Both the position numbers and the translations under genes were made by a program. This document shows positions 6,446 through 60,280 of a DNA stretch of 64,000 bases, one piece after another (position 1 is the first letter of the stretch; each line of letters begins with the position of its first letter). The stretch spans positions 32,821,216 through 32,885,215 of the forward strand of contig NC_086385.1 of NCBI RefSeq assembly GCF_036588685.1, written 5' to 3'. This stretch comes from Mytilus trossulus (Eukaryota). The notes beneath the pieces were generated by a model. It ran no database searches, was not told the DNA's origin, and saw nothing but the letters and a program-made list of their open reading frames with translations.

Positions 6446-6787
6446 CTACATATTGGCTTGCATGGCTTCGTAAGAAACAAGTAAAGATTTTAATGTTAAA
6501 ACAACATCCTTGATTATGATGTAATCACATGAATATCTGTATCTTCTGTCGGTAATCGGCGATTGGTTTGACATGATATCACGTGATTGATATTTCTCTA
6601 TGACAGCATCTGATTGGACGATGGCCATTTGAACATGACACAGCACATCATACAGTTTATTTTCAATGTCAATTATATCCGCTGAAAAGGCACCGTGGTC
6701 GTGCACGTTTTCATTGTTTTTAATCTGTTCCAGGAAAACTGCAGCTGTCGACAACTGTGCGTATGATTCCAAGAATGTTACGGTTAC
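6446..6787 (-). CDS. Paralog A exon 4 (helices B-D, stop)
   Basis: tttttttacag|GTA acceptor. VTVTFLESYAQLSTAAVFLEQ...LYDVLCHVQ...SRDIMSN...DYIIIKD...ANM*. About 35% identical by manual alignment to 27213-27569. AATAAA at 6353-6348. Confidence 0.92.
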   Translation of the reverse strand, partial: VTVTFLESYAQLSTAAVFLEQIKNNENVHDHGAFSADIIDIENKLYDVLCHVQMAIVQSDAVIEKYQSRDIMSNQSPITDRRYRYSCDYIIIKDVVLTLKSLLVSYEAMQANM

Positions 6788-7189
6788 CTGTAAAAAAATA
6801 TAAGTTGAATTATAATGCAACATCGTTTTTAACGTTCATTTTGATTGGATAAAGTCAACTATTTTCATGAAAAATGAAAGTACAAATCTGTATTCGGATA
6901 ATGAACTTTACTTTGACCCAAAACAAAATAGTTACTATCGATATCATCCTATTGTCAACTAGTAAACAGTGGCGGATCCAAAAAAATCATAAGTGGGGGC
7001 CCACTGACTGCCTAAGAGGGGGCTCAGTCCAGTCACGCTTCAGTGATTCCCTATATAAGCAACCAAATTTTTTCCCAAAAAGGAGGGGTCCCGGGCACCC
7101 TGCTCCCCCTAAATCCGCCTCTTGTAACTGAAATGAGAAGTCACATATGCAGTTTCAATTGCAAATGAACACAATAAAGCACAACCTTC

Positions 7190-7425
7190 ATTCTCAATAG
7201 ACAATGCAATATAAAGCAAAACTTATTATTTCTCAATAGCCAATGAAACAACACATACATTTTCAAAAGCCAATGACGTAAAACTTATTATTTCTCAAAC
7301 CCAATGTAAAACGTATATTTTTAATAGCCAATGAAATAAAACTTACATTTTCAATAGTCAATGAAACAAAAATCGCATTTTTAATAGCCAATGAAATAAA
7401 ACTTACATTTTTAAACACCAATGAA
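7190..7425 (+). repeat. About 30-bp tandem repeat overlapping the paralog A exon 3 donor
   Basis: aatagccaatgaaataaaacttacattt-like units, about 7 copies. Confidence 0.8.
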
Positions 7426-7520
7426 GCGTTCTTTTCTGGCATGTGTTCTACTTTGAAACCATCCAAATGTACTCGATCTAACCTACGTCTAATTGCTTGA
7501 ACAATGATTCTCTCATTTGC
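7407..7520 (-). CDS. Paralog A exon 3 (AB loop)
   Basis: tttttcttag|GCA ... AAT|GTAAGT, 114 nt, phase 0-0: ANERIIVQAIRRRLDRVHLDGFKVEHMPEKNASLVFKN. Same length and phase as paralog B exon 3. Confidence 0.88.
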
Positions 7521-9363
7521 CTAAGAAAAAGAAGAATAACACAAAATAAAATTTTTATGTTTGTTGTTTACTATTAAAAAGTAAGAAAATTACACACGTG
7601 CTGACTATATTCAGAATTCAGACGAATCGTAAAAAGAGGTAATATGTATACATGGGAAATTACTGCGCATATACCCTACCAAGACATTATATTGAAGTAA
7701 CCACTCTTTAATCGCTATCTTTAATAAAAGGGTTATTAAAACACCTTCAACTAGGTGCTGCTCACATATTACAGTGGGACTAATGCACCCCTTCTGTCAC
7801 CATTACTATAGAACTCTTTCATATATACATCGACCATTAATCTTTTATTGTTTTCTGTGGTTTTGGTGAGAGTGAGTGCTTGGTTTATTTTCAAACACTT
7901 TGCTCGAATCTACATGTCTTGAATTGTAAATATATATTAAATTCATTTACACTATTCCGAAAGATGTTCCAAGCGCATTTAAGAGAAAGGATTCTAACTT
8001 TGGCTAGTATTATATTTTAAGACATTATGTTACAACCTAGTTATATGTTTGCTTTTTGTGAGTTTGTAAATTAGGGGGTGGGGTGGGGCAACTTCCGAAG
8101 CAAAGTTGTCGGCTCTCCGGACATTCCCGAAGTCCTGCGTTGATTGCCGAGTTTATGAGCTTCAGTCCTTGCTTGGAAGTTGGGGTGGGGTAGGGGTTCT
8201 GGATGGGGTTCTTAAAATCAAGAAATGTCGACCAAGTGAACAGAAAAAAGGGGGAAAATATACCATAAAGTAAAAAATATGACTGGCGGAAAAGAATCAA
8301 TAGTTTTACCGTGCTTAAAATTATAAAGAAGAGAGCATAGTGGGAAAGTAAAATGAAATATATAGTGAAATTTCACAAAAAAATACAAAATATACAGAAA
8401 TGGCCACCTTATACAGACACTTTCTACGGCTTTCTTTTTGTATTACAGTTAAATAAGTTTTCTATAACGATGGTCTTATAGCATTTGTAAATTGTGCCAC
8501 TTGCTGGAGGATGAAAAACACTTCATCCTTGAATGTAAAATAAGCTAAGGGATAATCTATTTGAAAATTGTTTACCTTCTGATAATTGTATGTCTCTTAC
8601 CAAAGATAAAAAGAAAAGAAAAGAATAGCTTAACCGATCTATCATGGAACATGTTAAAAATTTTGGTTCCTTTATAAAATAGTAATTAGTCACCACTACT
8701 GGTGTTTGACGACCTTGACTTGCTGTCGGTACATTGGTCAGAAATAAGGGCAGAAGTCTTATCATTTTTTTTCATGTGTTGATTTCTTTTATTTTTTATT
8801 TATTTATTTGCTATATTATATAAAAAAAGAAGATGTGGTATGATTGCCAATAACAGCACTCTCCACAAGAGACCAAAATGAAACAGAAATTAGCAACTAT
8901 ATGTCACCTTACGGCCTTTAACAAGGAGAAAAGCCCATACCGCATATGTTTGTTTTTATTATAAAATATTTGTTTTTGTCACAATCTAATTATGTTAATA
9001 TGACGGTCAAGATATCATTATATAACACGTGATTAACTTATATAAAATAGGAGGAATAAACAACAGTTACAATACGAGAAGGATATCCTTAATAATATTA
9101 AGAAAATTAATAAAAGTAAATAAACAACAATTATTAATCAATTGAATCCCAACTCTTTTATCTTTATTTTCTTTGAACAAGGTTTAAAGATTGAGTTCCC
9201 CTGTTGTCAGACACTTGTTATAAAATATACGATTTCAGATACTTTTTGTAATATATAATTACTAAACACAGTAATATACAAATAATGAGTCGGACTACGT
9301 CTTTTTTTACAGCTTAGCTAACATCTGAATCTTTTTTTTTAAAAGAAAGATATTTGTACATAC

Positions 9364-9542
9364 GTATTTAATTCTCAGGTTGGTTGCTATGTCGTCTGCT
9401 TCTCGGAGTCTGACGATCAGATCAGAGATTATTTCCGGCTGAGGGGGTAGAGGTGGGCGTAACGTAGAAGATCCACATGGATGTCGCCATCTTTCATTTC
9501 CTGCTGGGAAACAGTCGATGTTACTCACCAAGGAAACAATCG
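9364..9542 (-). CDS. Paralog A exon 2 (end of signal peptide, WRHPCG motif, helix A)
   Basis: Acceptor tatttcag|CG and donor TAC|GTATGT (phase 0). Translates AIVSLVSNIDCFPAGNERWRHPCGSSTLRPPLPPQPEIISDLIVRLREADDIATNLRIKY. Homologous to 28904-29052. Confidence 0.9.
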
Positions 9543-9794
9543 CTGAAATATTAATAAGATTTGATGAAATATCTTATAAGAATTAATGTTAATCATGGTG
9601 GAAACAATCGCTGAAATCAAATGATTAATAATAATTGATGATATATAAAGGAAAACAATTGTCGTAAATCATCGAGGAAACAACAGCTGAAGTATTTAAA
9701 TAGAAATGATAAATTATTAAAATTTATCATATACTTAGATTAGTCAATAAAGTTAAATGTATGTACAATCATATGACAATCAATGATAATTGTT

Positions 9795-10607: not shown

Positions 10608-10641
10608 CCAAAACCATTAAAATGACCGACTGAAGGTACAT
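10608..10641 (-). CDS. Paralog A (Unpaired/IL-6-like helical cytokine), exon 1: signal peptide start MYLQSVILMVL
   Basis: ATG at 10641, 11 mostly hydrophobic codons plus G, then GTATGT donor (phase 1). Joins exon 2 to give MYLQSVILMVLAIVSLVSNIDC/FP. TATATATA lies about 80 nt upstream. Confidence 0.85.
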
Positions 10642-10689
10642 TATTGCTTGTTTGTTTACTTTTGTTTGATTACTTATATCTTAAAACTG

Positions 10690-15261: not shown

Positions 15262-15902
15262 TTTTTCGTAATTTGACATTGTTGTTAGTATTTTCGTTAT
15301 TTGACATTGTCGTTAGTTTTTTTTCGTAATTTGACATTGTTGTTAGTTTTTTTTCGTAATTTGACATTGTTGTTAGTTTTTTTCGTAATTTGACACTGTT
15401 GTTAGTTTTTTCGTAATTTTACATTGTTGTTAGTATTTTCGTAATTTGACATTGTTGTTAGTTTTTTTGTAATTTAACATTGTTGTTATTTTTTTCGTAT
15501 TTTGACATTGTTGTTATTTTTTTCGTAATTTGACATTGTTGTTAGTTTTTTCGTAATTTGACATTGTTGTTAGTTTTTTCGTAATTTGACATTGTTGTTA
15601 GTATTTTCGTAATTTGACATTGTTGTTAGTTTTTTTTCGTAATTTGACATTGTTGTTAGTATTTTCGTAATTTGACATTGTTGTTATTTTTTTTCGTAAT
15701 TTGACATTGTTGTTATTTTTTTTCGTAATTTGACATTGTTGTTATTTTTTTTCGTAATTCGACATTGTTGTTAGTTTTTTCGTAATTTGACATTGTTGTT
15801 ATTTTTTTCGTAATTTGACATTGTTGTTTTTTTTTTCGTAGTTTGACATTGTTGTTAGTTTTTTCGTAATTTGACATTGTTGTCATTTTTTTCGTAATTT
15901 GA
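15262..15902 (+). repeat. Minisatellite, about 31-33 bp unit
   Basis: ttttcgtaatttgacattgttgttagt repeated about 20 times. Confidence 0.95.
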
Positions 15903-17176
15903 GATTTGAAAGTCCCTTTTGTAACTCCAGCCTCTTTTTCGTGTGCTTCTTTAAATGTGTTTCTTATATTCCAGAGTTTAAGGAGGAGGATGATATACTT
16001 CGATGTATAGTTTGTTAATGCGGGTCTAGATTCGTTGTCCTTCATTTCTCTTTTCTTAAAGGTGCACTGCATGGCTACGAAATATTAAAAAAAATCAAAA
16101 AATGTTTTTTTTTATGTTTTATTATTAATAAAAGAGAAATAATGAAATAATAATTCGCTTTAAGCAGCCAGTATGGTTATGTTTTTTTTCAAAATAAAAT
16201 AAGAAACGACGATGATGAATCATTCATTTGCAAGTTATTCGACTTCGTTGAATCCATATATGCATATCAACTTCAATCAATCCCTTAACTAATTCTGTCT
16301 TATTTTTATTCAAAACTTCTGCCCTGTCTTTTTTCCCAAATTTCATCCTATATTGAACGAATCAAGCTTGAATTTATTTATTAATTTTACTTATACAAAA
16401 ATTTCATAAGATTCTGAGTTTCGGGTGGCATCTTAATACTATATTTCGCTCTCAATTATTTCTATCGCCCGGGATATCTGGGTATTTCTTGACCGTATAA
16501 AGTTTATTTGACCTTTGATCAATAAATCAAAATTTTGGTAAACTTAAACGTATTCTACTTATCTAAATAAGCCTATCAATATACAGTTCAGTAACACTTA
16601 ATCAGGAAAATTACATCTTAGCAGTAAATTGAGGAAGTTTCCAATCCGATTTTTCACCCACACCGGAAATCTGCTCTTTATTGATTGTAATTACACGTGG
16701 TTCTCTAATCATTGAAGTACCACGATAACGAAATACTTCTTCTTTCTTCTTCTTTAGTTTAAAAAACCCATTAACATACTGATGTTTACTTTCCGGCGCA
16801 TGCCTGGTATAATTTTGCAAATTTATGTATTTATAAATATAGTTTAACATGTATATGTATTCCATATTTTTGTACTTGTACATGTACATACATACATTTT
16901 TCCTCCCGAAGTAAACGCAAAATGGTTAACTGGATTTAGGAGAGAAAAAAAGACGTGCCTCTGAATTATTACTCAGTTGATTAATTTCAACGATATGTGC
17001 TCTGGGGCTATTATACTAGTAGTTAATATAATAATTCCAGATTTGCTACATTTTATATCGTGGGAAACAGCTTCTCTAATCGGCGATCCTCGGGTAAATC
17101 CGCTACTCTTCGAGTATATATATTTGCGAAAGCAAATTTACAGATCTAACATTGTTTGGTTGATGTTTAGACGAGT

Positions 17177-17178
<2 letters not shown>

Positions 17179-18335: not shown

Positions 18336-18355
18336 TTAATATATGATTCAATAGA

Positions 18356-19917
18356 TTTGAACAAGTGAGGTGACCCCAGTGCATATCTTATCAAATTTGA
18401 CTTTTTTTCCGTGTTACGGACGAAAAATTCGGCCTTTAAGAATACTTACCCCAGAAATTCTTTACCCTCACGTTGTAGTACTGTCCAAAAACTACTCATG
18501 AGAGCAGCTGCTGTAATGCCTAGCCATAAAGAACTACCGAAACAATGGGCCGGAAAGTGGGCGCCCCAAATGCGTATTTTATCGAATTAAGGCTTATTTC
18601 CGTATTTCGGACGCAATTTTCGTCCTTTAGGAATGCTTACCCAATAAATTATTTGCCCCCTCGTTGTAGTACTATCCAATAGCTATTTGTAACAGCAGAG
18701 TGTATAATCCCTAGCCATAAAGAACTGCCGGGGCAATGGGTTTGAACAAGTGAGGTGACCCCAGTGCATATCTTATCAAATTTTACTTTTTTTCCGTGTT
18801 ACGGACGAAAAATTCGGCCTTTAAGAATACTTACCCCAGAATTTTTTTACCCTCACGTTGTAGTACTGTCCAAAAGCTACTCATGAGAGCATCTGCTGTA
18901 ATGCCTAGCCATAAAGAACTACCGAAACAATGGGCCGGAAAGTGGGCGCCCCCAATGCGTATTTTATCGAATAAAGGCTTATTTCCGTTTTTCGGACGCA
19001 ATTTTCGTCCTTTAGGAATGCTTACCCAATAAATTATTTGCCCCCTCGTTGTAGTACTATCCAATAGCTATTTGTTACAGCAGAGTGTATTATCCCTAGC
19101 CATAAAGAACTGCCGGGGCAATGGGTTTGAACAAGTGAGGTGACCCCAGTGCATATCTTATCAAATTTGACTTTTTTTCCGTGTTACGGACGGAATATTC
19201 GGCCGTTAAGAATACTTACCCCAGAAATTCTTTACCCTCACGTTGTAGTACTGTCCAAAAGCTATTCATAAGAGCAGCTGGTGTAATACCTAGCCATAAA
19301 GAACTACCGAAACAATGGGTCGGAAAGTGGGCGCCCCCAATGCGTATTTTATCGAATAAAGGCTTATTTTCGTATTTCGGACGCAATTTTCGTCCTTTAG
19401 GAATGCTTACCCCAGAAATTCTTTGCTCCCTCCTTGTAGTACTATCCAATGGCTATTTGTTAGAGCAGAGTGTATAATCCCTGGCCATAAAGAACTGTCG
19501 GGGCAATGGGTTCGAACAAGTGAGGTGACCCCAGTGTATATCTTGTCAAATTTTACTTTTTTTCCGTGTTACGGACGAAAAATTCGGCCTTTAAGAATAC
19601 TTACCCCAGAAATTCTTTACCCTCACGTTGTAGTACTGTCCAAAAGCTATTCATAAGAGCAGCTGGTGTAATGCCTAGCCATAAAGAACTACCGAGACAA
19701 TGGGTCGGAAAGTGGGCGCCCCCAATGCGTATTTTATCGAATTAAGGCTTATTTCCGTATTTCGGACGCAATTTTCGTCCTTTAGGAATGCTCACCCCAG
19801 AAATTCTTTGCCCCCGCGTTGTAGTACTATCCAATAGCTATTTGTTAGAGCAGAGTGTATAATCCCTAGCCATAAAGAACTGCCGGGACAATGGGTTTGA
19901 ACAAGTAAGGTGACCCT
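18356..19917 (+). repeat. 385-bp dimeric tandem repeat, 4 copies
   Basis: tt(t/c)gaacaagt(g/a)aggtgaccc starts at 18356, 18741, 19126, 19511 and 19896. Each unit is two diverged subunits of about 190 bp. Confidence 0.95.
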
Positions 19918-20438: not shown

Positions 20439-23400
20439 TAGTCTCGATAACCCAGACGCATATTTAAATATAGCGTCTGGGGTGATTAACCGGACTGGTC
20501 AGATATTTATAGGGGGCGTAACAAATAATTAAATATAGAACATATCTATAAATAGCACTTCCGGTATCCCCATTCTATTTAAAAATAATTAATACAAAGT
20601 AACGTTACATGTTAAAAGAACGATCGAAAACTGTAATTGATAGCGGTGGTCTTTTTTCCTGAATTTTGTGACACATGTAAAGAGAAAATAATTAAAAATT
20701 AAGACAGAATTTTTTTTCGTGGGAAAAATTTGGCTGATTATATAAAGAAACAATGTAGCATGACTGTAGAGTGCCCTCATTATAACAAGGTCTGGATCAG
20801 CCACTGTTTGTGTATAGGGGGTATGCGCTAAGAGAGCCCAGGGATCCGTATAGGTGGACCGTTGTACATAAAGCCATACAATATACCCTAATTTTCTGGT
20901 GAGTTATATTTTCTCCGACATGTATCCCGAACGGCCTATAATCTAGGACCTCATCTTTATATTTATTGTCATTTTTTCAGTCCTGAACATTTAATACCAA
21001 TATTTACCACAAGACGATAACCAAGCAACCCAAAATCAATCTTTTTTGTATATTATAACACACCACGTTTAATATCCTCTTATCTTCATACTTAAAATGT
21101 CATTTTTCTATATTTTTGTATTATAGCATACTCTCTATTCTATGAAATATTTGCCACTTGACGTTATAAGCAACCAACAGTCGGTATATTGATCTATATT
21201 TTATTCACATTAGTCTGAATTCTTTATTTTCCCCCTTTTTTCTTAGTTTTGTGTCGTTATTCTTAATATTTCTGTAAATCCTTGTTATAATTTATGCTTT
21301 CCTTTTTATATAATCTTTCAGATAACTGACGCACTTACCTTACTCGAAAAGCACACATCAAGTTGCGTTTATGGAAAGAAAAACAACTCATACAAATCAT
21401 GACTAAGATTTCAATGTAGAAAATCCTCCATAACAACTTATTACTGGCAGATCAGTGAGATCATACAATAAGCCAACTTTTCATTTACAAAATTAACTGA
21501 TCTTAAAATTGCAAACGACAGAATAGTCTGAATGTTTCACAATAATCTATATCGCTTAATCCTTTTGGGAAGAAAACATTTAGGGACCAATCTTCACACA
21601 ATACCACTTTGTCAGTCTCTGTGTCCATGAAGAAATACATAAGTTAACCAGTCATTCATGAAACCCAATTTAATACTCCTTGAAAACATGTTTGAATCAT
21701 TCACATGGAAAAGATGGAATGGGATGTGTCCTATACTGCAGAAAAAATAACTGAAAAGTGTATTCTCCTACTACAAACTATTATGCTGAGTTCACAAGTA
21801 ATACTTATTTGATTCCAATATCCATCATGTATTTAAGGGCAGCTTCATAAAAATTCTCCTGTACATGTGAACCTTTATATAAAATAAGGAGATTGGTATG
21901 GTTGCTGATGAGGCAACAACCTAGCAAAGTTCAAATGACATGGATGTTCGCAAATATAATCACTGCTCGACCTTCAATATTAAGAAAACTCCATACCATA
22001 TAAATAACTGAGAATGGCCATCATGTAACTGAGATACAATTCAAACGTGAAAACTGTTAAATTTCTTATATGATTTTTAATTTGTTTAATTTCTCTGACA
22101 TATCTGACAACAATGTGATTCTTGATTTTTGTTTTATTTACTTAATGAATGTCTGTGTACCTTTTTTCGCTTTATGGTTGCTGTCAGAATAATGTTTATA
22201 CTGTGATTATAATGATTGCTGGCAGCTTCAGTAATTCAAAACAAATCTTTGAATCTTATTTTTCCTTATAAAATTGAAGCTGTTTATGATACAATGAAAT
22301 TTCAAGTATTATAGATTTTTTTTTAATTCTTCACATTTTACACATAATATCTGTGTCAAGAAATCTTCATTGGTTTGTCTACAAAAGAAAGTAAATGTTA
22401 AAATTATATTAATTTTTGGTCACCAGCATAGCATATATGAAAAACAAAATGTTTGGAAAAAACATCATATATAAATATAAATTTTAAAATGTCTTGGTGC
22501 AAGCTGAATCTCGCTACGGCAGGCGAGATTATCTCGCAGTGTTGATGACACAACCCATGGGTGGCATTGGGTTGTTTCCTGTTCTTTTGTCGGGTTGATG
22601 TCTCTTTGACACATTCCCTGTTTGTATTCTCTATCAAAATCATGCATGAACTTTTATCATTATTGAAGGCCATACAGTTGCCTATAAGTGCTCACATCCA
22701 CCTTGTTTGAACTTGGGGTGGATAACTGTCTCATTGGTATTCATACCGCGTCTTCTTATTTGTATAATGTTGACCTTTTGGTACTTTTATTCTCATTTTT
22801 TGTTTAAGTCAACAGTATGTCTTCTTCATTATGTTGATGTCTACTTTTGGTAATGTATATCACTGGGATCAGTCACCGGTTATTGCCTCATTGAGACCTC
22901 CTTTCATTGATGCTGGATCTATTGTTTTGCATCAAATCGAATTTTCATTGTTTTTCTCATGCCATGGTTTTATTTTAAGGTTTAGAAAGCCAATTGGTAT
23001 ATATTCACCGACAACATTGCATGTATTCTTTTATGATTTTTTTTTAGTGTAGAAAAAATGTCTTTTAAAAGTGCAAAAAAAGTATTGTCCAGTTGACCAG
23101 TTCAGACTTTGTTTACTAACAGTATATCTAAATTACTTTTTATAACAACGTGTCCCACTTCTTCTATGTTTGTAGAAGCTAAATGCATTTGTTTTAAAAA
23201 AAATCGAGCACAAATCATTTTCACCGTTTGGTGTATGTTCAAATTGGCATCTTCTAGATATATTTTGTTTGGTTTTCTTCTGCTAATGGTTTTGGATTGC
23301 GTTCCCTCTTTTAAATGTGTACAACATTGCGCATCATTCCTTCCCTCCCTTTTTTTTAACACATATCAAAATGCGAACTCCATTATACAATGCAGACAGA

Positions 23401-26479: not shown

Positions 26480-26956
26480 ACAGAACATAACATAGTAAAA
26501 AATATAAACATTTATTACAAAAGTATAAAATTCATACAAAAATGTGAGCATTATATATAAATATATATATACATAAACATTCTTTATCAAATAAACGTTT
26601 TCGATTAATATAATCTACCCTTTGATATATCCATAAACTTGGACGTTTTAAAATAATGAATTGTAAACTCTTTGGTAAACAGGAATAAATGAATTAATTG
26701 AATAAAATATGTCTTTCACAATAATGTAGTCACGTGAATGCAAAAAGCTGTAATTGTCAATTGAATGTATTTGATTGGACATGATATCACGTGATGGAAC
26801 ATTGTCAACAACTCTGCCAAGTTGAGATAAAGCTGCTTGAATTTTACAAAGTACACTATGTATATAATGTTTTATCCATTTTTGTAAATTCTCCAATAAA
26901 CGTATTCTCGTGAGTCTGATGATACATCGTTTCGTTATCAATAACTTGTTCTAGGT
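26480..26956 (-). pseudogene. Tandem duplicate of paralog B terminal exon (5'-truncated, frameshifted) plus 3'UTR
   Basis: Close copy of about 27056-27515. It starts mid-exon at LEQV without the native acceptor and has a 4-nt insertion near 26859-26862 (ctatgtatata versus ctatata). Confidence 0.9.
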
Positions 26957-27167
26957 AAACTTTACTAGGAATCGGTAATCCTCGAGTGTCTCCGGTTCTC
27001 TCCATCTATTCGTTAGATGGAGATACGGAATCAACCGAGTTGTGACAAATGCCAAAACTGAACATAACATGGTAAAAAATATAAACATTTATTACAAAGT
27101 ATAAAATTCATACAAAAATATTAACATTATATTTACATAAACATTCTTTATCAAATAAAACTTTTTT

Positions 27168-27212: not shown

Positions 27213-27569
27213 TTAAAAAAATGAATTGTAAACTCTTTGGTAAACGGGAATTAATGAATTAATTGAATAAAATATGTCTCTTACAATTATATAGTCACGT
27301 GAATGCAAAAAGCTGTAATTGTCAACTGAACGTAATTCATTGGACATGATATCACGTGATGGAACATTGTCAACAACTCTGCCAAGTTGAGATAAAGCTG
27401 CTTGAATTTTACAAAGTACACTATATAATGATTTATCCATTTTTGTAAATTCTTCAATAAACGTATTCTCGTGAGTCTGATGATAAATCGTCTCGTTATG
27501 AATAACTTGTTCTAGGAAGACAGCAGCCGAAGAAATTACATTATACGATTTTATGTGCCACGATGCCAC
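27213..27569 (-). CDS. Paralog B exon 4 (helices B-D, stop)
   Basis: tttttacag|GTG acceptor. VASWHIKSYNVISSAAVFLEQ...LYSVLCKIQ...SRDIMSN...RDYIIVRD...NSFF*. AATAAA at 27093-27088. Confidence 0.92.
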   Translation of the reverse strand: MASWHIKSYNVISSAAVFLEQVIHNETIYHQTHENTFIEEFTKMDKSLYSVLCKIQAALSQLGRVVDNVPSRDIMSNELRSVDNYSFLHSRDYIIVRDIFYSINSLIPVYQRVYNSFF

Positions 27570-28261: not shown

Positions 28262-28375
28262 ATTATTGATAGCTGACGTAATGTTATCAGTAAAATTTTC
28301 TGGTTTCAGGCCAGGAAAAGGCCCAGCACCATTCAGTGAAGCAATTATGGCTGAATTGCCTATTCTTTTCTCCGC
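28262..28375 (-). CDS. Paralog B exon 3 (AB loop)
   Basis: atatttag|GCG ... AAT|GTAAGT, 114 nt open: AEKRIGNSAIIASLNGAGPFPGLKPENFTDNITSAINN. Not in the ORF track. Confidence 0.9.
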
Positions 28376-28903: not shown

Positions 28904-29052
28904 ATAATTTACTCGTGTTTGATTGGTCAATTTAACAGCATCCTGTAATTTCGATATCACTTCTAGTATGAGTTGACTTTGATTACCGCAAGGGCTTCTC
29001 CATTTCTCAGCCACAGGAAAAGAACTGATTTTGTGTATCATGGCTATAAAAG
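28904..29052 (-). CDS. Paralog B exon 2 (WRSPCG motif, helix A)
   Basis: ttttttacag|CT (phase 1) and TAT|GTAAGT. Translates FIAMIHKISSFPVAEKWRSPCGNQSQLILEVISKLQDAVKLTNQTRVNY. Confidence 0.9.
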
Positions 29053-30670: not shown

Positions 30671-32464
30671 TACTATATACATTAGCGACGTTCCATTATT
30701 ATGTAAAATTGGTGATGATCGAATGAAACAAAACAGCGTGAAATAATTTAAGGGAAATTAGTCGTCTCTTTTAATATTCTCACCATCCGGTCACATGCAT
30801 GGTCAAAAGAATGTTACACAAACTAAACATTTATATGAACTAAAAACCAAGGATAATTTAGACAAAGAGACATGATAGAGGTATAAAATCTAAATTTGCA
30901 ACTCAATTAAGTCTATGAATTACAACATTCTAGAAAGAAAAGAAGAATTTCGTTGTTTTTTTTACTTTCCCTGACGTGTAACCGCTTTCGTTTTTGTTTC
31001 TCTCTCTGACGTGAAACGAAATCATCCAAACAAAAGGTGAGTTTCAGTTTTTCACAATTATATTAAATTTATTACTGCTTTATTGCTATTTGTGTAATAT
31101 AATAAAGATAACTATTTCAATATGATGAACTAACGATTGCAGTAACTTTTGAAAATATTGTCATAAAATAATGCTTAAACAAATGAAAAGAAAAGTAACG
31201 GTTTTATTTTGTTTTTATGATTTAATGCGGCAATACACCATTTTCCGTATTTTATATATATCCCGAATCATCTTATTTATTTTTGAATTTATTAATTAAA
31301 TGATATACATTCTGTTTCTGAAAACTATTAATTATTATTTTTCATATTTTTGTAATGAGATTCTGTTTATTGTCCTAATAAAAGTCTCAAAAACATATAG
31401 CGTTGTAAACAGTTCATTCTAACTGACATGTAGTTCTATATAATGGCATTTTATTTATAAATTACACGTCACATTAACATTACCATGATACATGTTTTTC
31501 ATTCTATGAGGCTCCTAATGGTGTTCTTCATTTTTAGATACTTTAAATTTGTAAGCCATGGTATCTCTATTTCTTAATTAGTTTTGCCTTTTTTTTCTAT
31601 TTTTTCTATTTCAACACCACAGAATGGCATTATTTATTGATAATTATTTCTTTTTGCTTTTTTTGTTTATTCCTATTTTTTGTGCCTTATTTTGCACGTT
31701 TTGTCAATTATTCTCTGAGAACCACACATATCCTCTCCTAAATCTTCGTGTGATGCCTAAATGCTAAGTATATCCTATACTATATTTTTTGCATTACAAC
31801 AATCCGATGTACGTACCTAAGGAAGCGATATAGTGGGCTGCTACTTGTTTCATTTTGACTTTTACGTTGTTTTAAATTCTTTGTCCAGTGTATCAAGAAT
31901 ATTTATACTGATAAACATTGATGCATATTCTTTTATATATTCTATTAGGAATCCCAAAACGAAGATTTTGATAATATGTACTATATATATATTAATAATT
32001 TAATTACTAGGTATTTCCTCTGATCTTATGAGACTCTTAGAGAATGAAAGTAGCGAGCGGCTAAATATTTATAATCAACTTATCCAATAATCAAGAAACA
32101 GGGTATTCAGGAAGTTTCAAGTGGTCTGAAATGGAAAAAAAACTTCTATTTTTAGAAAGATGTACATTTAGTGTTTGCGGTAGAATGCGGAAGTGATGAT
32201 GTCATTTTCTCACGGTTGTTACTGAATTTGATGAATGGATTTAAACTTTTCTTCAACGTATGTAGTTACGATATTGTCGAAAGAAACAGATTAATTTGTT
32301 TCGGTTTATCGACTTTATATTTGATTTCTTCCATTAGATATGTTCTCTTTTAATTCCTTTAAAAAAATTTACGACGATAATTAATAAAAGATCTGGTTCA
32401 TAAAAGTTAATTTTTTGAAAGCGAACACTTTCTAGGTTATTAAATCCCGAATACACCTACATAC

Positions 32465-44821: not shown

Positions 44822-45425
44822 TCACGAATCATATGAAAGCACTATTGTCAGTTCTTTTACATGGTTCGTAAGTCGGAAATCACGATCCATATGAAAGCAC
44901 TATTGTCAGTTCTTTTACATGGTTCGTAAGTCGAAAATCACGATCCATATGAAAACACTATTGTCAGTTCTTTTACATGGTTCGTAAGTCGGAAATCACG
45001 ATCCATATGAAAACACTATTGTCAGTTCTTTTACATGGTTCGTAAGTCGGAAATCACGATCCATATGAAAGCACTATTGTCAGTTCTTTTACATGGTTCG
45101 TAAGTCGGAAATCACGATCCATATGAAAACACTATTGTCAGTTCTTTTACATGGTTCGTAAGTCGAAAATCACGATCCATATGAAAGCACTATTGTCAGT
45201 TCTTTTACATGGTTCGTAAGTCGAAAATCACGATCCATATGAAAACACTATTGTCAGTTCTTTTACATGGTTCGTAAGTCGGAAATCACGATCCATATGA
45301 AAGCACTATTGTCAGTTCTTTTACATGGTTCGTAAGTAGGAAATCACGATCCATATCAAAGCACTATTGTCAGTTCTTTTACATGGTTCGTAAGTAGGAA
45401 ATCACGATCCATATCAAAGCACTAT
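44822..45425 (+). repeat. 58-bp tandem array, about 10.4 copies
   Basis: tcacgatccatatgaaagcactattgtcagttcttttacatggttcgtaagtcggaaa starts every 58 nt from 44822 to 45402. Confidence 0.95.
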
Positions 45426-51826: not shown

Positions 51827-54800
51827 GCGATGTTGTCATCGAAATAATTTCTCAAGAAAAGGAGTACATAATAATTAATTACAATTTCATACTGACGAAT
51901 TACTTTCTTCATTTTTTAAATTCAAAATATTCTTGAGAAATTAAATCATTCCGTTTCTATTATTAATCATTGATTCACCTGCATGTGTACGTCAATTATT
52001 TCCTTAAGTTTAACCATTCTTCTCTATTATTCATTTATTGATGTTTAGCGACCCTTATTTCCTATTCCTTCTTAATGCCTATTTTTTTTTTCTCTTTTTC
52101 TCTTATTTTTTGGTTCATTTTTCTGCAATATTTGCTTATTATTCTCTATACTGTAAACCCATCTGGACCCTCTAATTTACCTTTCATGTATAAAACTTTA
52201 TATGTGACTACACGTACATATATACCTTGTTTTGTTTTTGTTTTGGTATACAAAATTTCTGACGTTAGAATACATTTGCATAGTAATTTCACAATCCAAT
52301 CGAACCACAGTGCATTGTGGTTTACATGAGTTTACTTTCACTTTAGAACACGAAGGATTCTGGCTGAATGTTTTGAATTGTTTGACAGAATGACATTTTT
52401 GACTTTGTCGGTCATCTACTATAATATATATAATACATGTCTTGAAAATGTACATCTACAGCCTACTCTTCACTGTCCCAGGTTAGGGGGAGGGTTGGGA
52501 TCCCGCTGACATTTTTAACCCTGCCACATTATTTATGTATGTGGCTGTCCCAAGTCAGGAGCCTGTAATTCAGTGGTTGTCGTTTGTTTATGTGTTAATA
52601 TTTGTTTTTTTTTATCATTTTGTTTTTTTACATAAATGAGGCCGTTAGTTTTCTCGTTTGAATTGTTTTACATTGTCTTATCAGGGCCTTTTATAGCTGA
52701 CTATGCGGTATTGGCTTTGCTCATTGTTGAAGGCCGTACGGTGACCTATAGTTGTTAATGTTTGTGTCATTTTGGTCTTTTGTGGATAGTTATCTCATTG
52801 GCAATCATACCACATCTTCTATTTTATATCTCCAATTTGCACGATACGAATTACTGGTTTCGACTTTTTTAAAGACCTGTCAAAGTAAGATAAACCAAGT
52901 TTTATCTAATATCATGCTCTGTACCTTTGCATTTACTGCACGTGATATTATTTAGTATAAAAAAAAGATGTTGAATAATAATACTACAATTTCGATTAAT
53001 TATAGGCCACCATACGGCCTTCAACAATGATGCAAAAACATTTACTGTATAGAATAGAGAATGGAAATGGGGAATGTGTCAAAGAGACTACAACCCAACT
53101 AGAAAGCAGAAATCAGCACAAAACCACTTATGTGTCTTCAGCGTGAAAATATTACACCGGAGTCATGCTTTATAACTGGTCCATTAACAAAAAAGCGTAA
53201 TAGTTCAGTGGTAATGTACGTCCCACTAAACTCCAAAACATATAAATGAACTATAAGTAAAAAACTTAATGTCAGAGGCTCCTGACTACAAATAGGCGCA
53301 AAAATGCAACGTATAATCACCAATAAAAGGCCCCGATATGAAAAATGTGAATCTACAAACGAGAAAAATCAACGGCTTAATCTATGACAAAATAATTTAC
53401 AAAAACAAATATGGCAGGCATGAACCAACGAAAACAATTTAACTACATGATCCTGACTTGGGAGGCACACGCAGAATGTGGCAGGGTTAAACAGGTTTGA
53501 ATGCACACAACACATCGTAATGGAAAACTATGTCTGCATTTTATGTCAAATTTCATCCTAGCCCTCCCCTTCCCCCACTCCATAATAATCAAATGGTTGT
53601 TCCTTTAAGAGCCAATGAAAGGGCTTTGTACGGGTTCAGCACGATGCATGACGTACACACTCCCCAGTACACGCTTCATTTCGACTAGCTGTGGTTACGT
53701 ATTTATATATCCCGTACAGAGACAAACTGCGACAATATTTATTTAGGTAAAACAGCCGGGTTGTAGGAGATACAACTTTTGTTTACACACCAACCTTTAT
53801 AAATCAAAAGAAATAGCGGGGAAAAAAGCTCTGTGCGATGTACATACAATAAATTCAGGGGCGGATCCAGTCATTTTCAAAAGGTGTGTGGTGTGGGGGT
53901 TGCGGGATGGGTGGGGTGGTACCAACCGTATGTCCCTATGCATTCAACTGCATTGGTTGTCCATAAAAAATAGGGTTACAACCCCCGAAACCTCCCCCTT
54001 CCTTTATCCGACACTGAAATGAAATTGATTTTGAGAAATTTTATATCTTTTGCAAACGGTTTTGGAATATGTTTTTTGTCGAGCCTTCGACTTTTGTCGA
54101 AAAAGCGACACTAAGCGATCCTACATTCCGACGTCGTCGGTGTCGTCGTCGTCGGTGGCGTCCACAAATATTCACTCTGTGGTTAAAGTTTTTCAAATTT
54201 TAATAACTTTCTTAAACTATACTGGATTACTTCCAAACGTGGACAGAAGCTTGTTTATGATCACAAGATAGTATCCAGAAGTAAAAGTAAAACTCATAAA
54301 TCTAAAACAAACTGAGAACGCCATGGCTAAAGATGAAATTTAAAAAACAAACAGAAAAACAATAGTACACATGACACAACATAGAAATCTAATTAAAAGA
54401 ATAAACAACACGAACTCCAACAAAAACTAGGGGTGCTCTTGACGTTTTCGCTAAGAATAAAGCACACAGCAAATAAATTACCCGAATGGCGATGTTGTCA
54501 TATAGAAATATTTTCTCAAGAAAAGGAGTACATAATAATTAATTACAATTTCATACTGCCGAATTACTTTCTTCATTTTTTAAATTCATTCTATTTTTGA
54601 GAAATCAAATTATTCCGCTTCTATTAATAACCATTGATTCACCTGTGTACGTCAATTACTTCCATAACGGAAATGTAACTTTCACCTTATTTGAGGGTCT
54701 TGACCGGGTTTCACTCAACTAATTTTCTTGGTCCATAATATAGTATTCCGTAAGATTTTACGCCATTCCCCCTATTCGTTTTAGAGTTTAACCATTATTC

Positions 54801-57028
54801 TCATTATAGATATTAAGCGACCTCTCATTCCCTATTCCTTTTTAATGCCTTTTTTTCTTCTCTTTTTCTCTTATTTTTGGTTCATTTTTCTGCAATGTTT
54901 GCTTATTGTTCTTTTTACTGTAAACCCCATCTGGACCCACTAATTTACCTTTCATGTATAAAACTTTATATGTGACTACACGTACATACATGTATATACC
55001 TTATTTTTATTTTTTTTGGTATACAAAATTTCTGACGTCAGAATACAATAGCATATTAATTTCACAATCCAATCGAACCACAGTGCATTGTGGTTTACAT
55101 AAGTTTTACTTTCACTTTAGAACACGATGCATTCTGGGTGAATGTTTTGAATTGTTCAGAATGACATGTTTGACTTTGTCGGTCATCTTCTATAATATAT
55201 ATAATAAATAAAATAAAATTGAGAATGGAAATGAGGAATGTGTCAAAGAGACAACAACCCGACAAAAGATAAAAACAACAGCAGAAGGTCACCAACAGGT
55301 CTTCGATGTAGCGAGAAATTCCCGCACCCGGAGGCTTGTACATCTATAGCATACTCTTCAATTTGCATGATACGAATTACAGTACTGGTTTCAACTTTTT
55401 AAAAACCTGTCAAAGTAAGATAAACCCAGTTTTATCTATTATTATGCTCTGTATCTTTGCATTTACTGCACTGATACTTTTAAGTATAAAAATAAAAAGA
55501 TGTTGAATAATAATACTACAATTTCAATTAAATATAGGCCCCCATACGGCCTTCAACAATGATGCTAAAACATTTACTGTATAGAATAGAGAATGGAAAT
55601 GGGGAATGTGTCAAAGAGACTACAACCCAACTACTAAGATAGCAGAAATCAGCACAAAACCACTTTTAAAATGTGTGTCTTCAGCGAGAAAATATTACAC
55701 CCGGAATCATGCTTTATAACTGGTCCATCAACAAAAATGAATAATAATGCATTGGTAATGTACGTCCCACTAAACTCCAAAACATATAAATGAACTAAAA
55801 TTTAAAAACTTGCAAAGGTCAGAGGTTCCTGACTTCGAATAGGCGCAAAAATGCCATGTATAGTCACAAATAAAAGGCCCCGATATGAAAAACGTGAATC
55901 AATATTTATTAAAACGAGAAAAACAAACGACTTAATTTATGACAAAAAAGTTTACCAAAACAAATATGACAGGCATGAACCAACGAAAACAACTTAACTA
56001 CATGATCCTGACTTGGGAGGCACACGCAGAATGTGACAGGGTTAAACAGGTTTGAATGCACACAACACATCGTACTGGAAAATCCTGTCTGCATTTTAAG
56101 TCAAATTTCATCCTAGTCCTCCCCTCCCCCACTCCATGATAACAATCAAGTGGTAGTTCCTTTAAGAACGTATAAAAGGGCTTTGTACGGGTTTAGCACG
56201 ATGCATGAAGTACACACTCCCTACACGTTTTATTTCGACTAGCTGTGGTTACGTATTTATATATCCCGTACAGAGACAAACTGCGACAATATTTACTTAG
56301 GTACAACAGCCGGGTTGTAGGAGATACAACTTTTGTTTACACACCAACCTTTATAAATCAAAAGAAATAGCGTGAAAAAAAGTTTTACGATGTATATGTA
56401 TGGGCGGATCCAGCCATTTTCAAAAGGTGTGTGGGAGTGGAGGAAGGGGAGGGTGGTACCAACCGTATTTCCCCATTTAACTGCATTGGTCGTCCAAAAA
56501 AACCTCCCCTTCCCTGATCCGAAACTGAAATGAAATTGATTTTGAGAAATTCATTATCTCTCGCAAAACGTTTTGGATTGGGTTTTTTTTACAAGTCGGA
56601 AAAATATTGTTTAATTACTTCCGCTTATTAAACTATATATAGTCAACCGGTTCGTCACCCTAATTGGTTTACGAGATTTGGACGAGATTTGGACAGCGGA
56701 GACTACTCTTACTTAAGTTATAATTCGTTAGTATTATTAAATGCAGTGCGGGGACTTTTTTTCTAATTCTAGCAGCGACTAAGCCACATGAGGATTGAAT
56801 TTCACTTAAAAATCACTCTTGTTGGTGTTAAGTGATTTAGATTCACTGCATGTTCACAGGGTGATTGCTGTTTATTGGAAGACATACGTTTACGACCCTG
56901 TCTTTGTTACCTATTCAAAAACACAGAGTGAATCGCCCACAATCACACCAGATTTCAGTTTGAATGTTATATGCATGCTGTTTGTCATGTTCTTGACGTT
57001 TTCGCTAAGAATAAAGCACACAGCAAAT
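51827..57028 (+). repeat. About 2.6-kb tandem segmental duplication (51827-54478 and 54487-57028)
   Basis: Collinear high similarity from gcgatgttgtcat to ttgacgttttcgctaagaataaagcacacagcaaata, with copy-specific repeat insertions. Confidence 0.9.
52470..52825 (-). repeat. Abundant Mytilus-type interspersed repeat family A (aagatgtggtatgattgccaatgagac); other copies 8826-8945, 10050-10295, 12550-12720, 14240-14325, 21885-22055, 22650-22765, 25865-26130
   Basis: Multiple homologous copies in both orientations within the window. Confidence 0.85.
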
Positions 57029-57954: not shown

Positions 57955-57969
57955 CTGGAAATTAAAATA

Positions 57970-58312: not shown

Positions 58313-58499
58313 ATATAAATCAAACGGGAAAATATCGCAATAGTAATAATTGAAATATATGTGTAGTAAGCAAAAAAACACCCCCTCATGCGTTTTCTTT
58401 TTCAATTGAATATTAAGTTAACTGACATATCAATTTCTTTATATAAATAAATACAATAATTATACAGTTTCATATACAAGTGTTGTGTCACGAACCTAT

Positions 58500-58991
58500 C
58501 TATAACAGCGCAGATTTCATTGGATGACAATTATATAATAGCTCGTAATTATATCGCTCTCTATCTAATATTAGTTTAATTTTATACAACTTAATAAAAT
58601 CTTTTTGCCAACGACCACATCTATCTTTAGAACGGTATTTCATTTCGTCGTCTCTTTTATCCTCCACTTCATCTTTACTTTCATCTTCTGTATCAGAACT
58701 TGATGAGCTACTTTCACTTTCATCATCAAAACTATTTCTGGCATGATCGATTTCGTCGGAGATTTTAGTAGTGTAAGTTTCAGCAGAAATGCTTTCATTG
58801 ATAAATTTTCTTCTCGTATTTGATTGGTCGATAGCAATGTCAAGGTCTTGTAGAATGGAATTTACTTTTGGCAGCAGATCGTTAAATCTGGTTTCAACGT
58901 TTAGAAACTCGGTTTCGTTTTTGTAAACATTCATCAGAACACGTTTCGTTCTGGTAAACCGTTTGTGGGATCTTAAAAACCTTACATGAAG
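58500..58991 (-). CDS. Paralog C terminal exon (helices B-D with acidic CD-loop insert)
   Basis: tttttttgcag|CTT acceptor, 163 aa open. KVNSILQDLDIAIDQSN matches KLYDVLCHVQMAIVQSD; QKDFIKL matches SRDYIIV; D/E/S-rich insert between them. Confidence 0.85.
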   Translation of the reverse strand, partial: LHVRFLRSHKRFTRTKRVLMNVYKNETEFLNVETRFNDLLPKVNSILQDLDIAIDQSNTRRKFINESISAETYTTKISDEIDHARNSFDDESESSSSSSDTEDESKDEVEDKRDDEMKYRSKDRCGRWQKDFIKLYKIKLILDRERYNYELLYNCHPMKSALL

Positions 58992-59271
58992 CTGCAAAAA
59001 AATTAAAAACAAAATTAACAGATTCAAACAATCATGATAATTAATTATCTGTGATAATAATCCCATAGATGTAAATACCTTTATCTATGATAATACTGAA
59101 TAAAAATATAAATAAGAGTACTTCTAATAACATTGAAAATAAGAACTAGTATTTGTTTCGATCACTCTGTTTCCTATGAATTTAGATTTTATAAGTTTTG
59201 CATTAAATAGTATTTATTATGTTTTTTACGTTTTTAAATCTTCATTTAGCCGTAATAAATGTTCGTTTCGA

Positions 59272-59315
59272 GCGTCACTGATGAGTCCTAAGTAGACGAA
59301 ACGCGCGGCTGGCGC
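59272..59315 (+). ncRNA. Minimal type I hammerhead ribozyme motif, cleavage triplet mutated
   Basis: Stem I GCGTCA/TGGCGC, core CTGATGA (59278-59284), stem II GTC/GAC, GAAA (59298-59301), palindromic stem III CGCGCG. GUC is replaced by GGC (G59308). Confidence 0.75.
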
Positions 59316-59373
59316 AATTACAATTTTTAATCCTGGTATCTTTGAGGAGTTTGTTTCGAATATGACTTGATAC

Positions 59374-59481
59374 CTTTTTAAGTGCCTTCTGTACCCTGCT
59401 TTCATCAAGTTTCTTTACTCTGCATTTTACAGATGCTGATAGCATATGAATCATCCTACGACTCTGTAGTTTCTGTAAACC
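59374..59481 (-). CDS. Paralog C exon (AB loop)
   Basis: attttctag|GGT ... AAG|GTATCA, 108 nt, phase 0-0, open: GLQKLQSRRMIHMLSASVKCRVKKLDESRVQKALKK. Position and size match exon 3 of A and B. Confidence 0.7.
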
Positions 59482-60146
59482 CTAGAAAATATTTTTATTT
59501 TTTAGAATAATGAACATTTCAAATGAAAAATATTTTTCATACTTATTATGGCAGCAGATAAATAAATAAATAAATGTAAATGTTGAGATAAAACAGTTAA
59601 TCGATTGAATGAAGATTATTAAATATCTATCATTAACAAATGTTTCCCAAATAGGACAAAACTATTTCGTTCGATCTCATTCGCATTTAAATGTATTCTT
59701 TAGTTTTGCTTTGAAATCCTCACCGCGACATCGAGATGAGTAACTGATAACAAATTATTTCATACTCCTTCTGAATTCTTTCAATATCATTGTTGATAGT
59801 TGAACGTCCAGTTGCAAATATTTTATGGATATTCAGGAAAAAGGTATTTTTTCAATGTAGATATTCTGCATGATATATGTTAACCTGGACGGCGGACAAG
59901 AAATTTGGACAGGAATTTATGAAAAAAAACCGTCAAGTTTGATCGTCGCAACGTTAACAGACGTACAACCTAGATACACCAGTATTGTTTACAATGATAA
60001 GTAAAGAGACTATGGCTCTCACCTTACACATGCAGGGCATGTGAATTACATGTTCTTTTGACCGGACATGGCCGCGTATTCATACATGCAATACTGATGT
60101 ACACGTATATATATATTTATAATTATGAACATTTTATTCAACATAC

Positions 60147-60280
60147 AAAATTTCTTTGCACCTCGTCTATGTAATCTGAACCTTCTTGTAGTTTTATTTT
60201 CAATCCTCGAAGGATGTCAATTATTGGTGTCATAGGCGGGAAGTTTTCCATGCTCAGTTTCTGTTTTTGTCAAATATCAC
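60147..60280 (-). CDS. Paralog C exon (helix A); in-frame TGA at 60272-60270, ATG at 60251
   Basis: aatattccag|GT acceptor and TTT|GTATGT donor. Reading frame xDI*QKQKLS-MENFPPMTPIIDILRGLKIKLQEGSDYIDEVQRNF aligns with PPQPEIISDLIVRLREADDIATNLRIKY of paralog A. Confidence 0.75.

What the first reader, a model, noticed from the sequence alone, without database searches (positions are those of the whole stretch)
6446..60280. Cluster of three Unpaired/IL-6-like four-helix cytokine genes in a bivalve-like genome
Seen: three co-oriented spliced genes with matching exon architecture. A and B have a signal peptide, W-R-x-P-C-G, amphipathic helical segments, a helix-C VLC motif and a helix-D (R/C)DYII motif. 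B has six N-glycosylation sequons (NQS, NQT, NFT, NIT, NET, NYS). Established: class I helical cytokines such as IL-6, GH, EPO and LIF have a short first exon with a phase-1 intron followed by phase-0 introns. As I recall, insect Unpaired proteins have an N-terminal W-x-N-P-C and a helix-C LC motif and occur as a tandem trio in Drosophila. Molluscs have Domeless/gp130-like receptors, JAK and STAT, but their ligands are poorly defined. Inference: these are candidate molluscan JAK/STAT ligands, hard to see by ORF calling or simple BLAST.
Basis: partly seen in the sequence, partly recalled or inferred. Interest (0 to 1): 0.9.

Follow-up and report, generated by a model that had tools for sequence, protein, structure and literature searches.

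The report
Mussel IL-6-like helical cytokine genes
Two, perhaps three, neighbouring mussel genes encode secreted four-helix proteins whose predicted fold matches vertebrate IL-6-type cytokines, which makes them the first concrete candidates for the missing JAK/STAT ligands of molluscs.

Summary
The window is Mytilus trossulus chromosome DNA. Genes A and B are real, intact, co-oriented paralogues on the minus strand. Each has four exons, with intron phases 1, 0, 0. Both carry a signal-peptide-like start, W-R-x-P-C-G, a 38-residue third exon, a helix-C "VLC" and a helix-D "(C/R)DYII".

Gene A's exons match the public protein LOC134695241 (222 aa, "uncharacterized") exactly. Its AlphaFold2 model is confident (pLDDT 89.6, pTM 0.83). 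The best structural matches are IL-11, CLCF1, OSM, CNTF, IL-27p28, LIF and IL-6 (Z 16-19, near full length). Unrelated helix bundles score 8 or less.

The family has at least six members in this genome. It also occurs in other bivalves, a gastropod, many insects, crustaceans, a centipede and a springtail, unnamed everywhere.

The link to Drosophila Unpaired is weak. No mussel protein matches Pfam Unpaired, and one beetle homologue reaches only E 8.8e-4, below the cut-off.

Gene C shares the exon layout and a helix-A-like exon. It lacks the leader, both conserved cysteines and any significant profile match, so its membership is unproven.

Receptor binding and STAT activation are inferred, not shown. 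The scan holds only two notes, both on gene C in this same window; it had not found this family on other DNA.

The parts
10608..10641 (-). Gene A exon 1: start codon and first part of the signal peptide (11 codons plus 1 base; phase-1 donor GTATGT)
   Evidence: matches residues 1-11 of public protein P0006
9364..9542 (-). Gene A exon 2: rest of the signal peptide, W-R-H-P-C-G, Pro-rich linker, helix A; phase-0 donor
   Evidence: family HMM E 1e-8 to 1e-12
7407..7520 (-). Gene A exon 3: 38 codons, A-B loop with a short helix
   Evidence: model residues 72-109
6446..6787 (-). Gene A exon 4: most of helix B, helix C (VLC), C-D loop, helix D (CDYII), stop codon
   Evidence: HMM E about 1e-32 to 1e-38
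31817..31853 (-). Gene B exon 1 (found here): start codon, 12 codons plus G, donor GTACGT
   Evidence: first six residues equal those of M. edulis B-like protein P0012
28904..29052 (-). Gene B exon 2: phase-1 acceptor, W-R-S-P-C-G, helix A, sequons NQS and NQT
28262..28375 (-). Gene B exon 3: 38 codons, sequons NFT and NIT
27213..27569 (-). Gene B exon 4: helices B to D, VLC, RDYII, sequons NET and NYS, stop codon
26651..26966 (-). Degenerate, frame-shifted extra copy of gene B's last exon, downstream of B (pseudo-exon)
60147..60280 (-). Gene C exon 2-like: helix-A-like segment; TGA at 60270-60272 in the phase-1 frame; ATG at 60249-60251; no WxxPCG
   Evidence: family HMM E 0.25
59374..59481 (-). 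Gene C exon 3-like: 36 codons, phase 0 on both sides
58500..58991 (-). Gene C terminal exon: helical, with an acidic Ser/Asp/Glu insert; no VLC or RDYII

Best explanation
Genes A and B encode secreted, glycosylated, long-chain four-helix-bundle cytokines of the IL-6/gp130-ligand structural type. They belong to a fast-evolving, unnamed family found in molluscs and arthropods.

Shown here:
- intact spliced genes with a conserved exon and phase layout;
- an N-terminal hydrophobic leader;
- a confident up-up-down-down helical model that matches IL-11, CLCF1, OSM, CNTF, LIF and IL-6 over nearly its whole length;
- two nearly invariant cysteines, one in the N-terminal W-x-x-P-C motif and one in helix C.

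Inferred:
- the two cysteines form a disulfide that pins the N-terminus to helix C;
- the protein is secreted and bridges class I cytokine receptor chains of the Domeless/gp130 type through helix faces A/C and A/D;
- this activates JAK and STAT, the pathway whose molluscan ligand is unknown.

The family is probably the non-dipteran counterpart of insect Unpaired, but that link is weak. Gene C is most likely a strongly diverged, leaderless offshoot of the family. It has lost both cysteines and may no longer act as a secreted cytokine.
For: - Gene models and A/B homology.
- P0006 is gene A's product and a RefSeq protein of M. trossulus.
- AF2 with a 71-sequence alignment: pLDDT 89.6, pTM 0.83. 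Helices are 46-75, 100-138, 144-167 and 190-221, with long A-B and C-D loops and a short B-C loop.
- Foldseek against PDB: the listed top-50 matches are all long-chain class I cytokines, TM by target up to 0.80.
- VIA-align against 48,161 chains: IL-11 Z 18.9 (rmsd 2.1, 164 of 165 residues), CLCF1 18.2, OSM 17.2, CNTF 16.8, IL-27p28 16.7, LIF 16.5, IL-6 16.3. The first non-cytokine is at Z 8.3.
- ESM Atlas: the nearest clusters are a mollusc cluster in which 11% of members carry Pfam IL6, then GH, LIF, IL-11, IL-6 and G-CSF (scores 0.93-0.96). The beetle homologue behaves the same way, by features and by structure.
- Family breadth and conserved W..PC, AVxLEQ, LC and RDxxI columns.
- Pfam Unpaired is the best Pfam hit among cytokine families for any member (E 8.8e-4, beetle), and there are two weak IL11 hits.
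- A STAT DNA-binding domain is present in this genome.
- The literature states that molluscs have receptor, JAK and STAT but no known IL-6-like ligand (PMC13203501).
Against: - No mussel member reaches any cytokine Pfam family.
- Pfam Unpaired is sub-threshold (19.4 against 27 bits) and seen in only 2 of about 80 members scanned.
- There is no sequence-level hit to any solved cytokine.
- A shared fold does not prove function.
- No RNA evidence, receptor, binding or signalling test was possible.
- The signal peptide was judged by eye only.
Confidence: 0.62

Rival explanations
1. A and B are helical cytokines, but their receptor is not Domeless/gp130-like. It could be the orphan class I receptor CRLF3, whose natural ligand in invertebrates is unknown, or a GH/prolactin-type hormone receptor.
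For: Fold matches to placental lactogen (Z 16.7) and GH (Z 14.3) are almost as good as those to IL-6-type cytokines. Atlas neighbours include Hormone_1 clusters. No dipteran turned up among the 108 hits listed in the arthropod profile search. The literature notes that CRLF3 ligands are unidentified (abstract of PMC8063046, listed).
Against: The nine best structural matches are all gp130-family ligands. The only cytokine Pfam hints are Unpaired and IL11. The hit list was capped, so missing taxa mean little.
Confidence: 0.15
2. A and B are secreted four-helix proteins with a non-signalling role, for example a lineage-specific effector or carrier. On this reading the resemblance to cytokines is only a shared fold.
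For: Sequence identity to solved cytokines is 8-14%. There is no significant sequence link to any vertebrate cytokine family. Helical bundles can score fairly high by structure alone (note).
Against: Z 16-19 with near-complete coverage, the correct loop topology and a cytokine-only top list lie well above the background for helical proteins. The family is conserved across protostomes with invariant surface motifs. Independent language-model neighbours are all cytokines or hormones.
Confidence: 0.13
3. Gene C is not a family member. It is either an unrelated helical gene that happens to lie nearby, or a decayed pseudogene copy.
For: Family HMM E is 0.25-6 and hhalign probability is 1-5%. There is an in-frame TGA in the phase-1 frame, and no leader, no WxxPC, no LC and no RDYII. 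The AF2 model of e4 has low confidence (pLDDT 61).
Against: C has the same strand and the same three-exon layout, with a 36-codon middle exon. Its helix-A exon resembles those of the chromosome-4 paralogues (pairwise E 3e-6 to 4e-5 in a tiny search space). The e4 similarity is in register (NET, AI.QS, KDFI). A second copy 2.36 Mb away keeps open frames, the same ATG position and an acidic insert, which argues for a maintained gene rather than decay.
Confidence: 0.35

Closest known systems
Vertebrate IL-6/gp130-family cytokines (IL-11, CLCF1, CNTF, OSM, LIF, IL-6, IL-27p28)
   Same: Long-chain up-up-down-down four-helix bundle of about 180 residues, with long A-B and C-D loops and short helices inside the loops. 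Secreted and N-glycosylated. Z 16-19. The short leader exon followed by an exon that ends at helix A recalls the LIF/OSM/CT-1 gene layout, and an N-terminus-to-helix-C disulfide recalls LIF and OSM. Both of these last points come from my own knowledge and were not tested here.
   Different: Only 8-14% identity, and the proteins tested here reach no Pfam cytokine family; 11% of the Atlas's nearest mollusc cluster carry Pfam IL6. The family has its own invariant motifs (W-x-x-P-C-G, AV.LEQ, LC, RD.II). It is confined to protostomes as far as seen. Receptor use is unknown.
Insect Unpaired (Upd1-3, Pfam PF15972) and the mosquito Upd-like protein
   Same: Secreted, glycosylated helical cytokine-like ligands of protostomes. 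A beetle member of this family gives the best cytokine Pfam hit to Unpaired (E 8.8e-4, residues 8-154 against profile 22-168). Upd-like proteins are likewise very divergent and were recognised late (bioRxiv 10.1101/2025.09.21.677592).
   Different: No member reaches the Pfam cut-off, and the mussel proteins give no hit at all. No Upd sequence was available, so no profile-profile test could be run. Arthropod members form one clade set apart from the mollusc sequences by a long branch (99/98).
Oyster interferon-like protein CgIFNLP
   Same: A molluscan helical-cytokine-like protein reported to act through a receptor on JAK/STAT-type reporters (PMC8218723, PMC9756803).
   Different: It is about 15 kDa. 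Its published primers encode peptides (start M-E-R-K-K-D-K) that match no family member. It has been compared with class II cytokines, not IL-6 type.
Growth hormone / prolactin / placental lactogen
   Same: Same long-chain fold (Z 14-17). Hormone_1 clusters are among the Atlas neighbours.
   Different: They rank below the gp130-family ligands and show no sequence link.

Membership tests
Long-chain class I helical cytokines (IL-6/gp130-ligand type) | Four-helix up-up-down-down bundle with long A-B and C-D crossover loops | tested here: met
   AF2 pLDDT 89.6 and pTM 0.83, helices 46-75, 100-138, 144-167 and 190-221. Foldseek's listed top-50 matches are all such cytokines. VIA Z 16-19 to IL-11, CLCF1, OSM, CNTF, LIF and IL-6.
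Long-chain class I helical cytokines (IL-6/gp130-ligand type) | Secretory signal peptide | tested here: met
   Hydrophobic N-termini span e1 and e2 of A and B. Judged by inspection only; no signal-peptide predictor was available. Not met for gene C.
Long-chain class I helical cytokines (IL-6/gp130-ligand type) | Sequence-profile match to a curated cytokine family (Pfam IL6, IL11, LIF_OSM, CNTF, Hormone_1) | tested here: not met
   No hit for the mussel proteins. Only two weak IL11 hits (E 0.075-0.098) in other family members. No hit to solved cytokines by profile. The Atlas says 11% of the nearest mollusc cluster carry Pfam IL6.
Long-chain class I helical cytokines (IL-6/gp130-ligand type) | Binds a class I cytokine receptor and activates JAK/STAT | not testable with these tools
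Only a STAT DNA-binding domain was confirmed in the genome.
Unpaired (Pfam PF15972) | Match to the Pfam profile above the gathering score (27 bits) | tested here: not met
   The best score is 19.4 bits, E 8.8e-4, in a beetle homologue. Only 2 of about 80 members scanned give any hit, and no mussel protein does. The six-frame scan of this genome found nothing, but that is uninformative exon by exon.
   The motifs are nearly invariant in this family. No Upd sequence could be obtained to compare them.
CgIFNLP (oyster interferon-like protein) | Same protein family as the published oyster protein | tested here: not met
   Peptides encoded by the published primers match no family member. This is a weak test, because no Crassostrea gigas member was in hand.
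This protostome family (gene C as a member) | Significant profile match plus the conserved Cys pair and motifs | tested here: inconclusive
   HMM E 0.25-6, hhalign P 0.002-0.02, and the motifs are absent. Against that, the exon layout and helix-A similarity fit, and a conserved sister copy exists.

The most novel reading that the evidence does not exclude
This unnamed family is the ancestral protostome IL-6-type cytokine. It would be orthologous to insect Unpaired and homologous to the vertebrate gp130 ligands, and its mussel members would be the natural ligands of the molluscan Domeless/gp130-like receptor. If so, the IL-6/JAK/STAT ligand-receptor pair predates the split of protostomes and deuterostomes. 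It would also supply the missing ligand in crustaceans, Hymenoptera and other groups where none is known.
Probability: 0.35. Interest if true: 0.9.

Novelty: new member of a known kind. Interest (0 to 1): 0.77.

Why it matters
Molluscs have class I cytokine receptors, JAK and STAT. A 2026 survey still reports no IL-6-like ligand outside vertebrates apart from insect Upd, and proposes unrelated activators instead (PMC13203501). Reviews also list Upd as missing or poorly known in Hemiptera, Hymenoptera, Lepidoptera, fleas and most mosquitoes (PMC13535093).

This locus provides concrete, intact, testable genes in an aquaculture-relevant bivalve. Through their homologues it also provides candidates in shrimps, crabs, bees, ants, beetles and others. 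That turns the open question of what activates JAK/STAT in these animals into a set of ordinary binding and signalling experiments. It also gives a new anchor for dating the origin of IL-6-type cytokines.

Tried and rejected
- Pfam scans of every exon and of about 80 family members gave no family above its cut-off.
- A six-frame scan of the genome with Pfam Unpaired and with IL6Ra-bind found nothing. This is uninformative for split exons.
- A family profile against all PDB sequences gave only chance hits.
- An exact look-up of gene C's ORF found it absent from the protein collection.
- AF2 of gene C's last exon alone, with a two-sequence alignment, gave pLDDT 61 and pTM 0.26, too poor to search with.
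- I considered that the repeat lying about 50 bases upstream of exon 2 in both B and C showed common descent. I rejected this because the same element has at least six more copies in the window.
- I considered that CgIFNLP might be a mis-called last exon of this family. I rejected it on the primer-encoded peptides.
- I left out the joined step for genes B and C. Their exons were searched and folded separately by reference only. The full-length protein used for gene A is the public one, P0006.
Full report
**Origin and setting**

The window is G000:C13:32821216-32885215 of a 1.3-Gb genome. The spliced product of gene A is identical to NCBI "uncharacterized protein LOC134695241 [Mytilus trossulus]" (P0006), so the genome is M. 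trossulus. The window is AT-rich (30-36% GC) and rich in repeats. No other ORF of the window that I scanned gave a Pfam match.

**Observation: genes A and B**

Both genes lie on the minus strand. I read the DNA and mapped public proteins back to it.

| Exon | Gene A | Gene B |
|---|---|---|
| e1 | 10608-10641 | 31817-31853 |
| e2 | 9364-9542 | 28904-29052 |
| e3 | 7407-7520 | 28262-28375 |
| e4 | 6446-6787 | 27213-27569 |

- In both genes e1 is an ATG, 11 or 12 hydrophobic-rich codons and one extra G, so the first intron is phase 1.
- e2 carries the end of the leader, W-R-(H/S)-P-C-G and helix A, and ends in phase 0.
- e3 is exactly 38 codons in both genes.
- e4 carries the remaining helices.
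- All junctions are GT-AG.

A scan for an ATG, a hydrophobic stretch and a phase-1 donor recovered A's true exon 1 as a control. For B it returned seven candidates, one of which starts with the same six residues as the M. edulis B-like protein P0012.

A and B are homologous far beyond chance. tblastn gives E 9e-22 for e4 and 1e-8 for e2. The family HMM gives E 1e-29 to 1e-40.

A frame-shifted extra copy of B's last exon lies at 26651-26966.

**What the family is**

A full HMMER search of 1.8 billion representatives with B's last exon gave 62 hits. Profile searches then extended the set. Named members are listed:
- Molluscs: Mytilus edulis, M. galloprovincialis and M. coruscus, a scallop, an ark shell, an oyster, a unionid and a deep-sea gastropod.
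- Insects: many Hymenoptera, beetles, a cockroach, a termite, a cricket, a katydid, a stick insect and a thrips.
- Other arthropods: a springtail, Daphnia, a copepod, decapods, amphipods, a mantis shrimp and a centipede.

Nearly all are called "uncharacterized" or "hypothetical" (two carry evidently wrong automatic names), and none has a cytokine Pfam domain on record (one shrimp entry carries a TGF-beta propeptide).

Nearly invariant columns are the P-C of the N-terminal motif, the "AV.LEQ" stretch of helix B, the L-C of helix C and R-D-x-x-I of helix D.

This genome holds further members with the same e2/e4 layout; a middle exon was detected only in the two copies at 81.595 and 81.603 Mb. 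They lie at C4:81.595, 81.603 and 81.639 Mb and at C4:78.364 Mb, and there is a fragment at C13:33.77 Mb.

In a tree of the C-terminal domain the arthropods form one clade (99/98). The fast-evolving mollusc copies are poorly resolved. The bivalve copies fall outside the arthropod clade, so "a trio as in Drosophila" is a coincidence.

**Fold**

AlphaFold2 on P0006 with a 71-sequence alignment gave pLDDT 89.6 and pTM 0.83. The model has four long helices at 46-75, 100-138, 144-167 and 190-221. The A-B and C-D loops are long and each holds a short helix. The B-C loop is short. This is the long-chain cytokine topology.

- Foldseek against PDB returned only long-chain class I cytokines in the listed top 50, with TM by target up to 0.80. 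E-values were weak, as is usual for all-helical proteins.
- The Foldseek-independent search of 48,161 chains gave IL-11 Z 18.9 (rmsd 2.1 over 164 of 165 residues), CLCF1 18.2, OSM 17.2, CNTF 16.8, IL-27p28 16.7, placental lactogen 16.7, LIF 16.5 and IL-6 16.3. The first non-cytokine (a zinc transporter) is at Z 8.3 and ferritin-like bundles at 8.0 or below.
- The ESM Atlas feature search puts P0006 next to a mollusc cluster in which 11% of members carry Pfam IL6, and then next to GH, LIF, IL-11, IL-6 and G-CSF clusters.
- The beetle homologue sits next to cardiotrophin-1, CLCF1, IL-11 and LIF, both by features and by the Atlas's own structure.

**Link to Unpaired**

This is the weak point.
- No mussel protein hits Pfam Unpaired.
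- Among about 80 members scanned, two give sub-threshold hits. The best is the beetle protein P0040, at E 8.8e-4 and 19.4 bits against a cut-off of 27. It is aligned from just before its W-I-N-P-C-G motif.
- Unpaired had been named in advance, and it is the best cytokine family hit of all these scans, so this is more than noise. It is not membership.
- I could not obtain a Upd sequence for a profile-profile test.

A recent review reports Upd in a cockroach and in thrips (PMC13535093). Both groups have members of this family. Whether these are the same genes was not checked.

**Gene C**

The exons are e2 60147-60280, e3 59374-59481 (36 codons) and e4 58500-58991.

Against membership:
- Read in the phase-1 frame of A and B, e2 has TGA as its fourth codon.
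- There is no leader, no W-x-x-P-C, no L-C and no R-D-Y-I-I.
- The family HMM is not significant and hhalign gives 1-5% probability, though the alignment is in register.

For membership:
- The helix-A exon resembles those of the chromosome-4 paralogues.
- The end of helix B (N-E-T), helix C (A-I-x-Q-S) and helix D (K-D-F-I) line up by eye.
- A sister copy at C13:35.237-35.240 Mb keeps open frames, an ATG at exactly the same distance before the conserved G-L-K-I-K-L, and an acidic insert.

Both C-type copies lack both cysteines of the conserved pair. That fits a leaderless, disulfide-free derivative better than a null allele. I put membership at about 65%. Folding e4 alone was uninformative.

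**Mechanism**

Shown: gene structure, homology and fold.

Inferred:
- secretion;
- a Cys34-Cys159 disulfide;
- binding to a Domeless/gp130-like class I receptor;
- JAK/STAT activation.

A STAT DNA-binding domain is present in the genome. The literature reports receptor, JAK and STAT in molluscs but no IL-6-like ligand (PMC13203501).

**Novelty**

Searches of the held literature found no description of an IL-6-like or Upd-like cytokine in molluscs. The oyster interferon-like protein CgIFNLP is a different protein, judging by its primer-encoded peptides. Even the mosquito Upd-like protein was recognised only in 2025. I file the finding as a new member of a known kind.

**Limits**

- The joined products of genes B and C were not built, searched or folded.

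Noticed in passing
window 7218-7425: A 30-base minisatellite (about 7 copies) begins inside the last 19 bases of gene A's exon 3 and repeats its donor region (AAAAAT|GTAAGT) in intron 3. This creates look-alike donor sites downstream of the real one.
   Followed up: partly
window 9531-9616: The acceptor region of gene A's exon 2 (…tttcag|cgattgtttcc…) occurs twice, about 68 bases apart. The upstream copy would shift the frame. M. coruscus P0063 reads like a mixture of the two versions.
   Followed up: no
window 29100-29560; also 60315-60566, 55212-55335, 55581-55854, 53049-53307, 52480-52564, 41612-41795, 22586-22634: An interspersed repeat of about 460 bases has at least eight copies in the window. 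Two of them lie about 50 bases upstream of exon 2 of genes B and C.
   Followed up: partly
window 18349-19916, 15262-15906, 44822-45425, 341-880: Large tandem arrays: 385 bases x 4.1 at 95% identity (it carries the repeated ORFs at 18.8-19.7 kb), 28 bases x 22.7, 58 bases x 10.4, and 31 bases x 17.
   Followed up: no
G000:C4:81595311-81597503, 81602695-81604922, 81638729-81641533; C4:78364404-78367018; C13:33770141-33770326: Further family members in this genome. They include a near-identical tandem pair that is orthologous to M. edulis and M. galloprovincialis 241-aa proteins (P0027 cluster), and a B-like last-exon fragment.
   Followed up: partly
G000:C13:35237266-35240176 (L019, L021): A sister copy of gene C lies 2.36 Mb away. 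It has the same exon types, the same ATG position, an acidic insert and no conserved cysteines.
   Followed up: partly
protein P0063 (Mytilus coruscus, 431 aa): This public model is a head-to-tail fusion of two A-like proteins. Gene A is therefore tandemly duplicated in M. coruscus and mis-annotated there as one gene.
   Followed up: no
proteins P0023, P0032, P0051, P0060 and most Hymenoptera hits: The long arthropod forms carry an N-terminal extension with a conserved R-D-Q-R-T-T-x-H-R motif and a hydrophobic segment ahead of the cytokine domain. They might be membrane-anchored precursors.
   Followed up: no
window 4728-5138 (-): A 136-aa ORF with a Cys/His-rich C-terminal motif reminiscent of the tail of non-LTR retrotransposon ORF2 proteins. 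It has no Pfam hit.
   Followed up: partly
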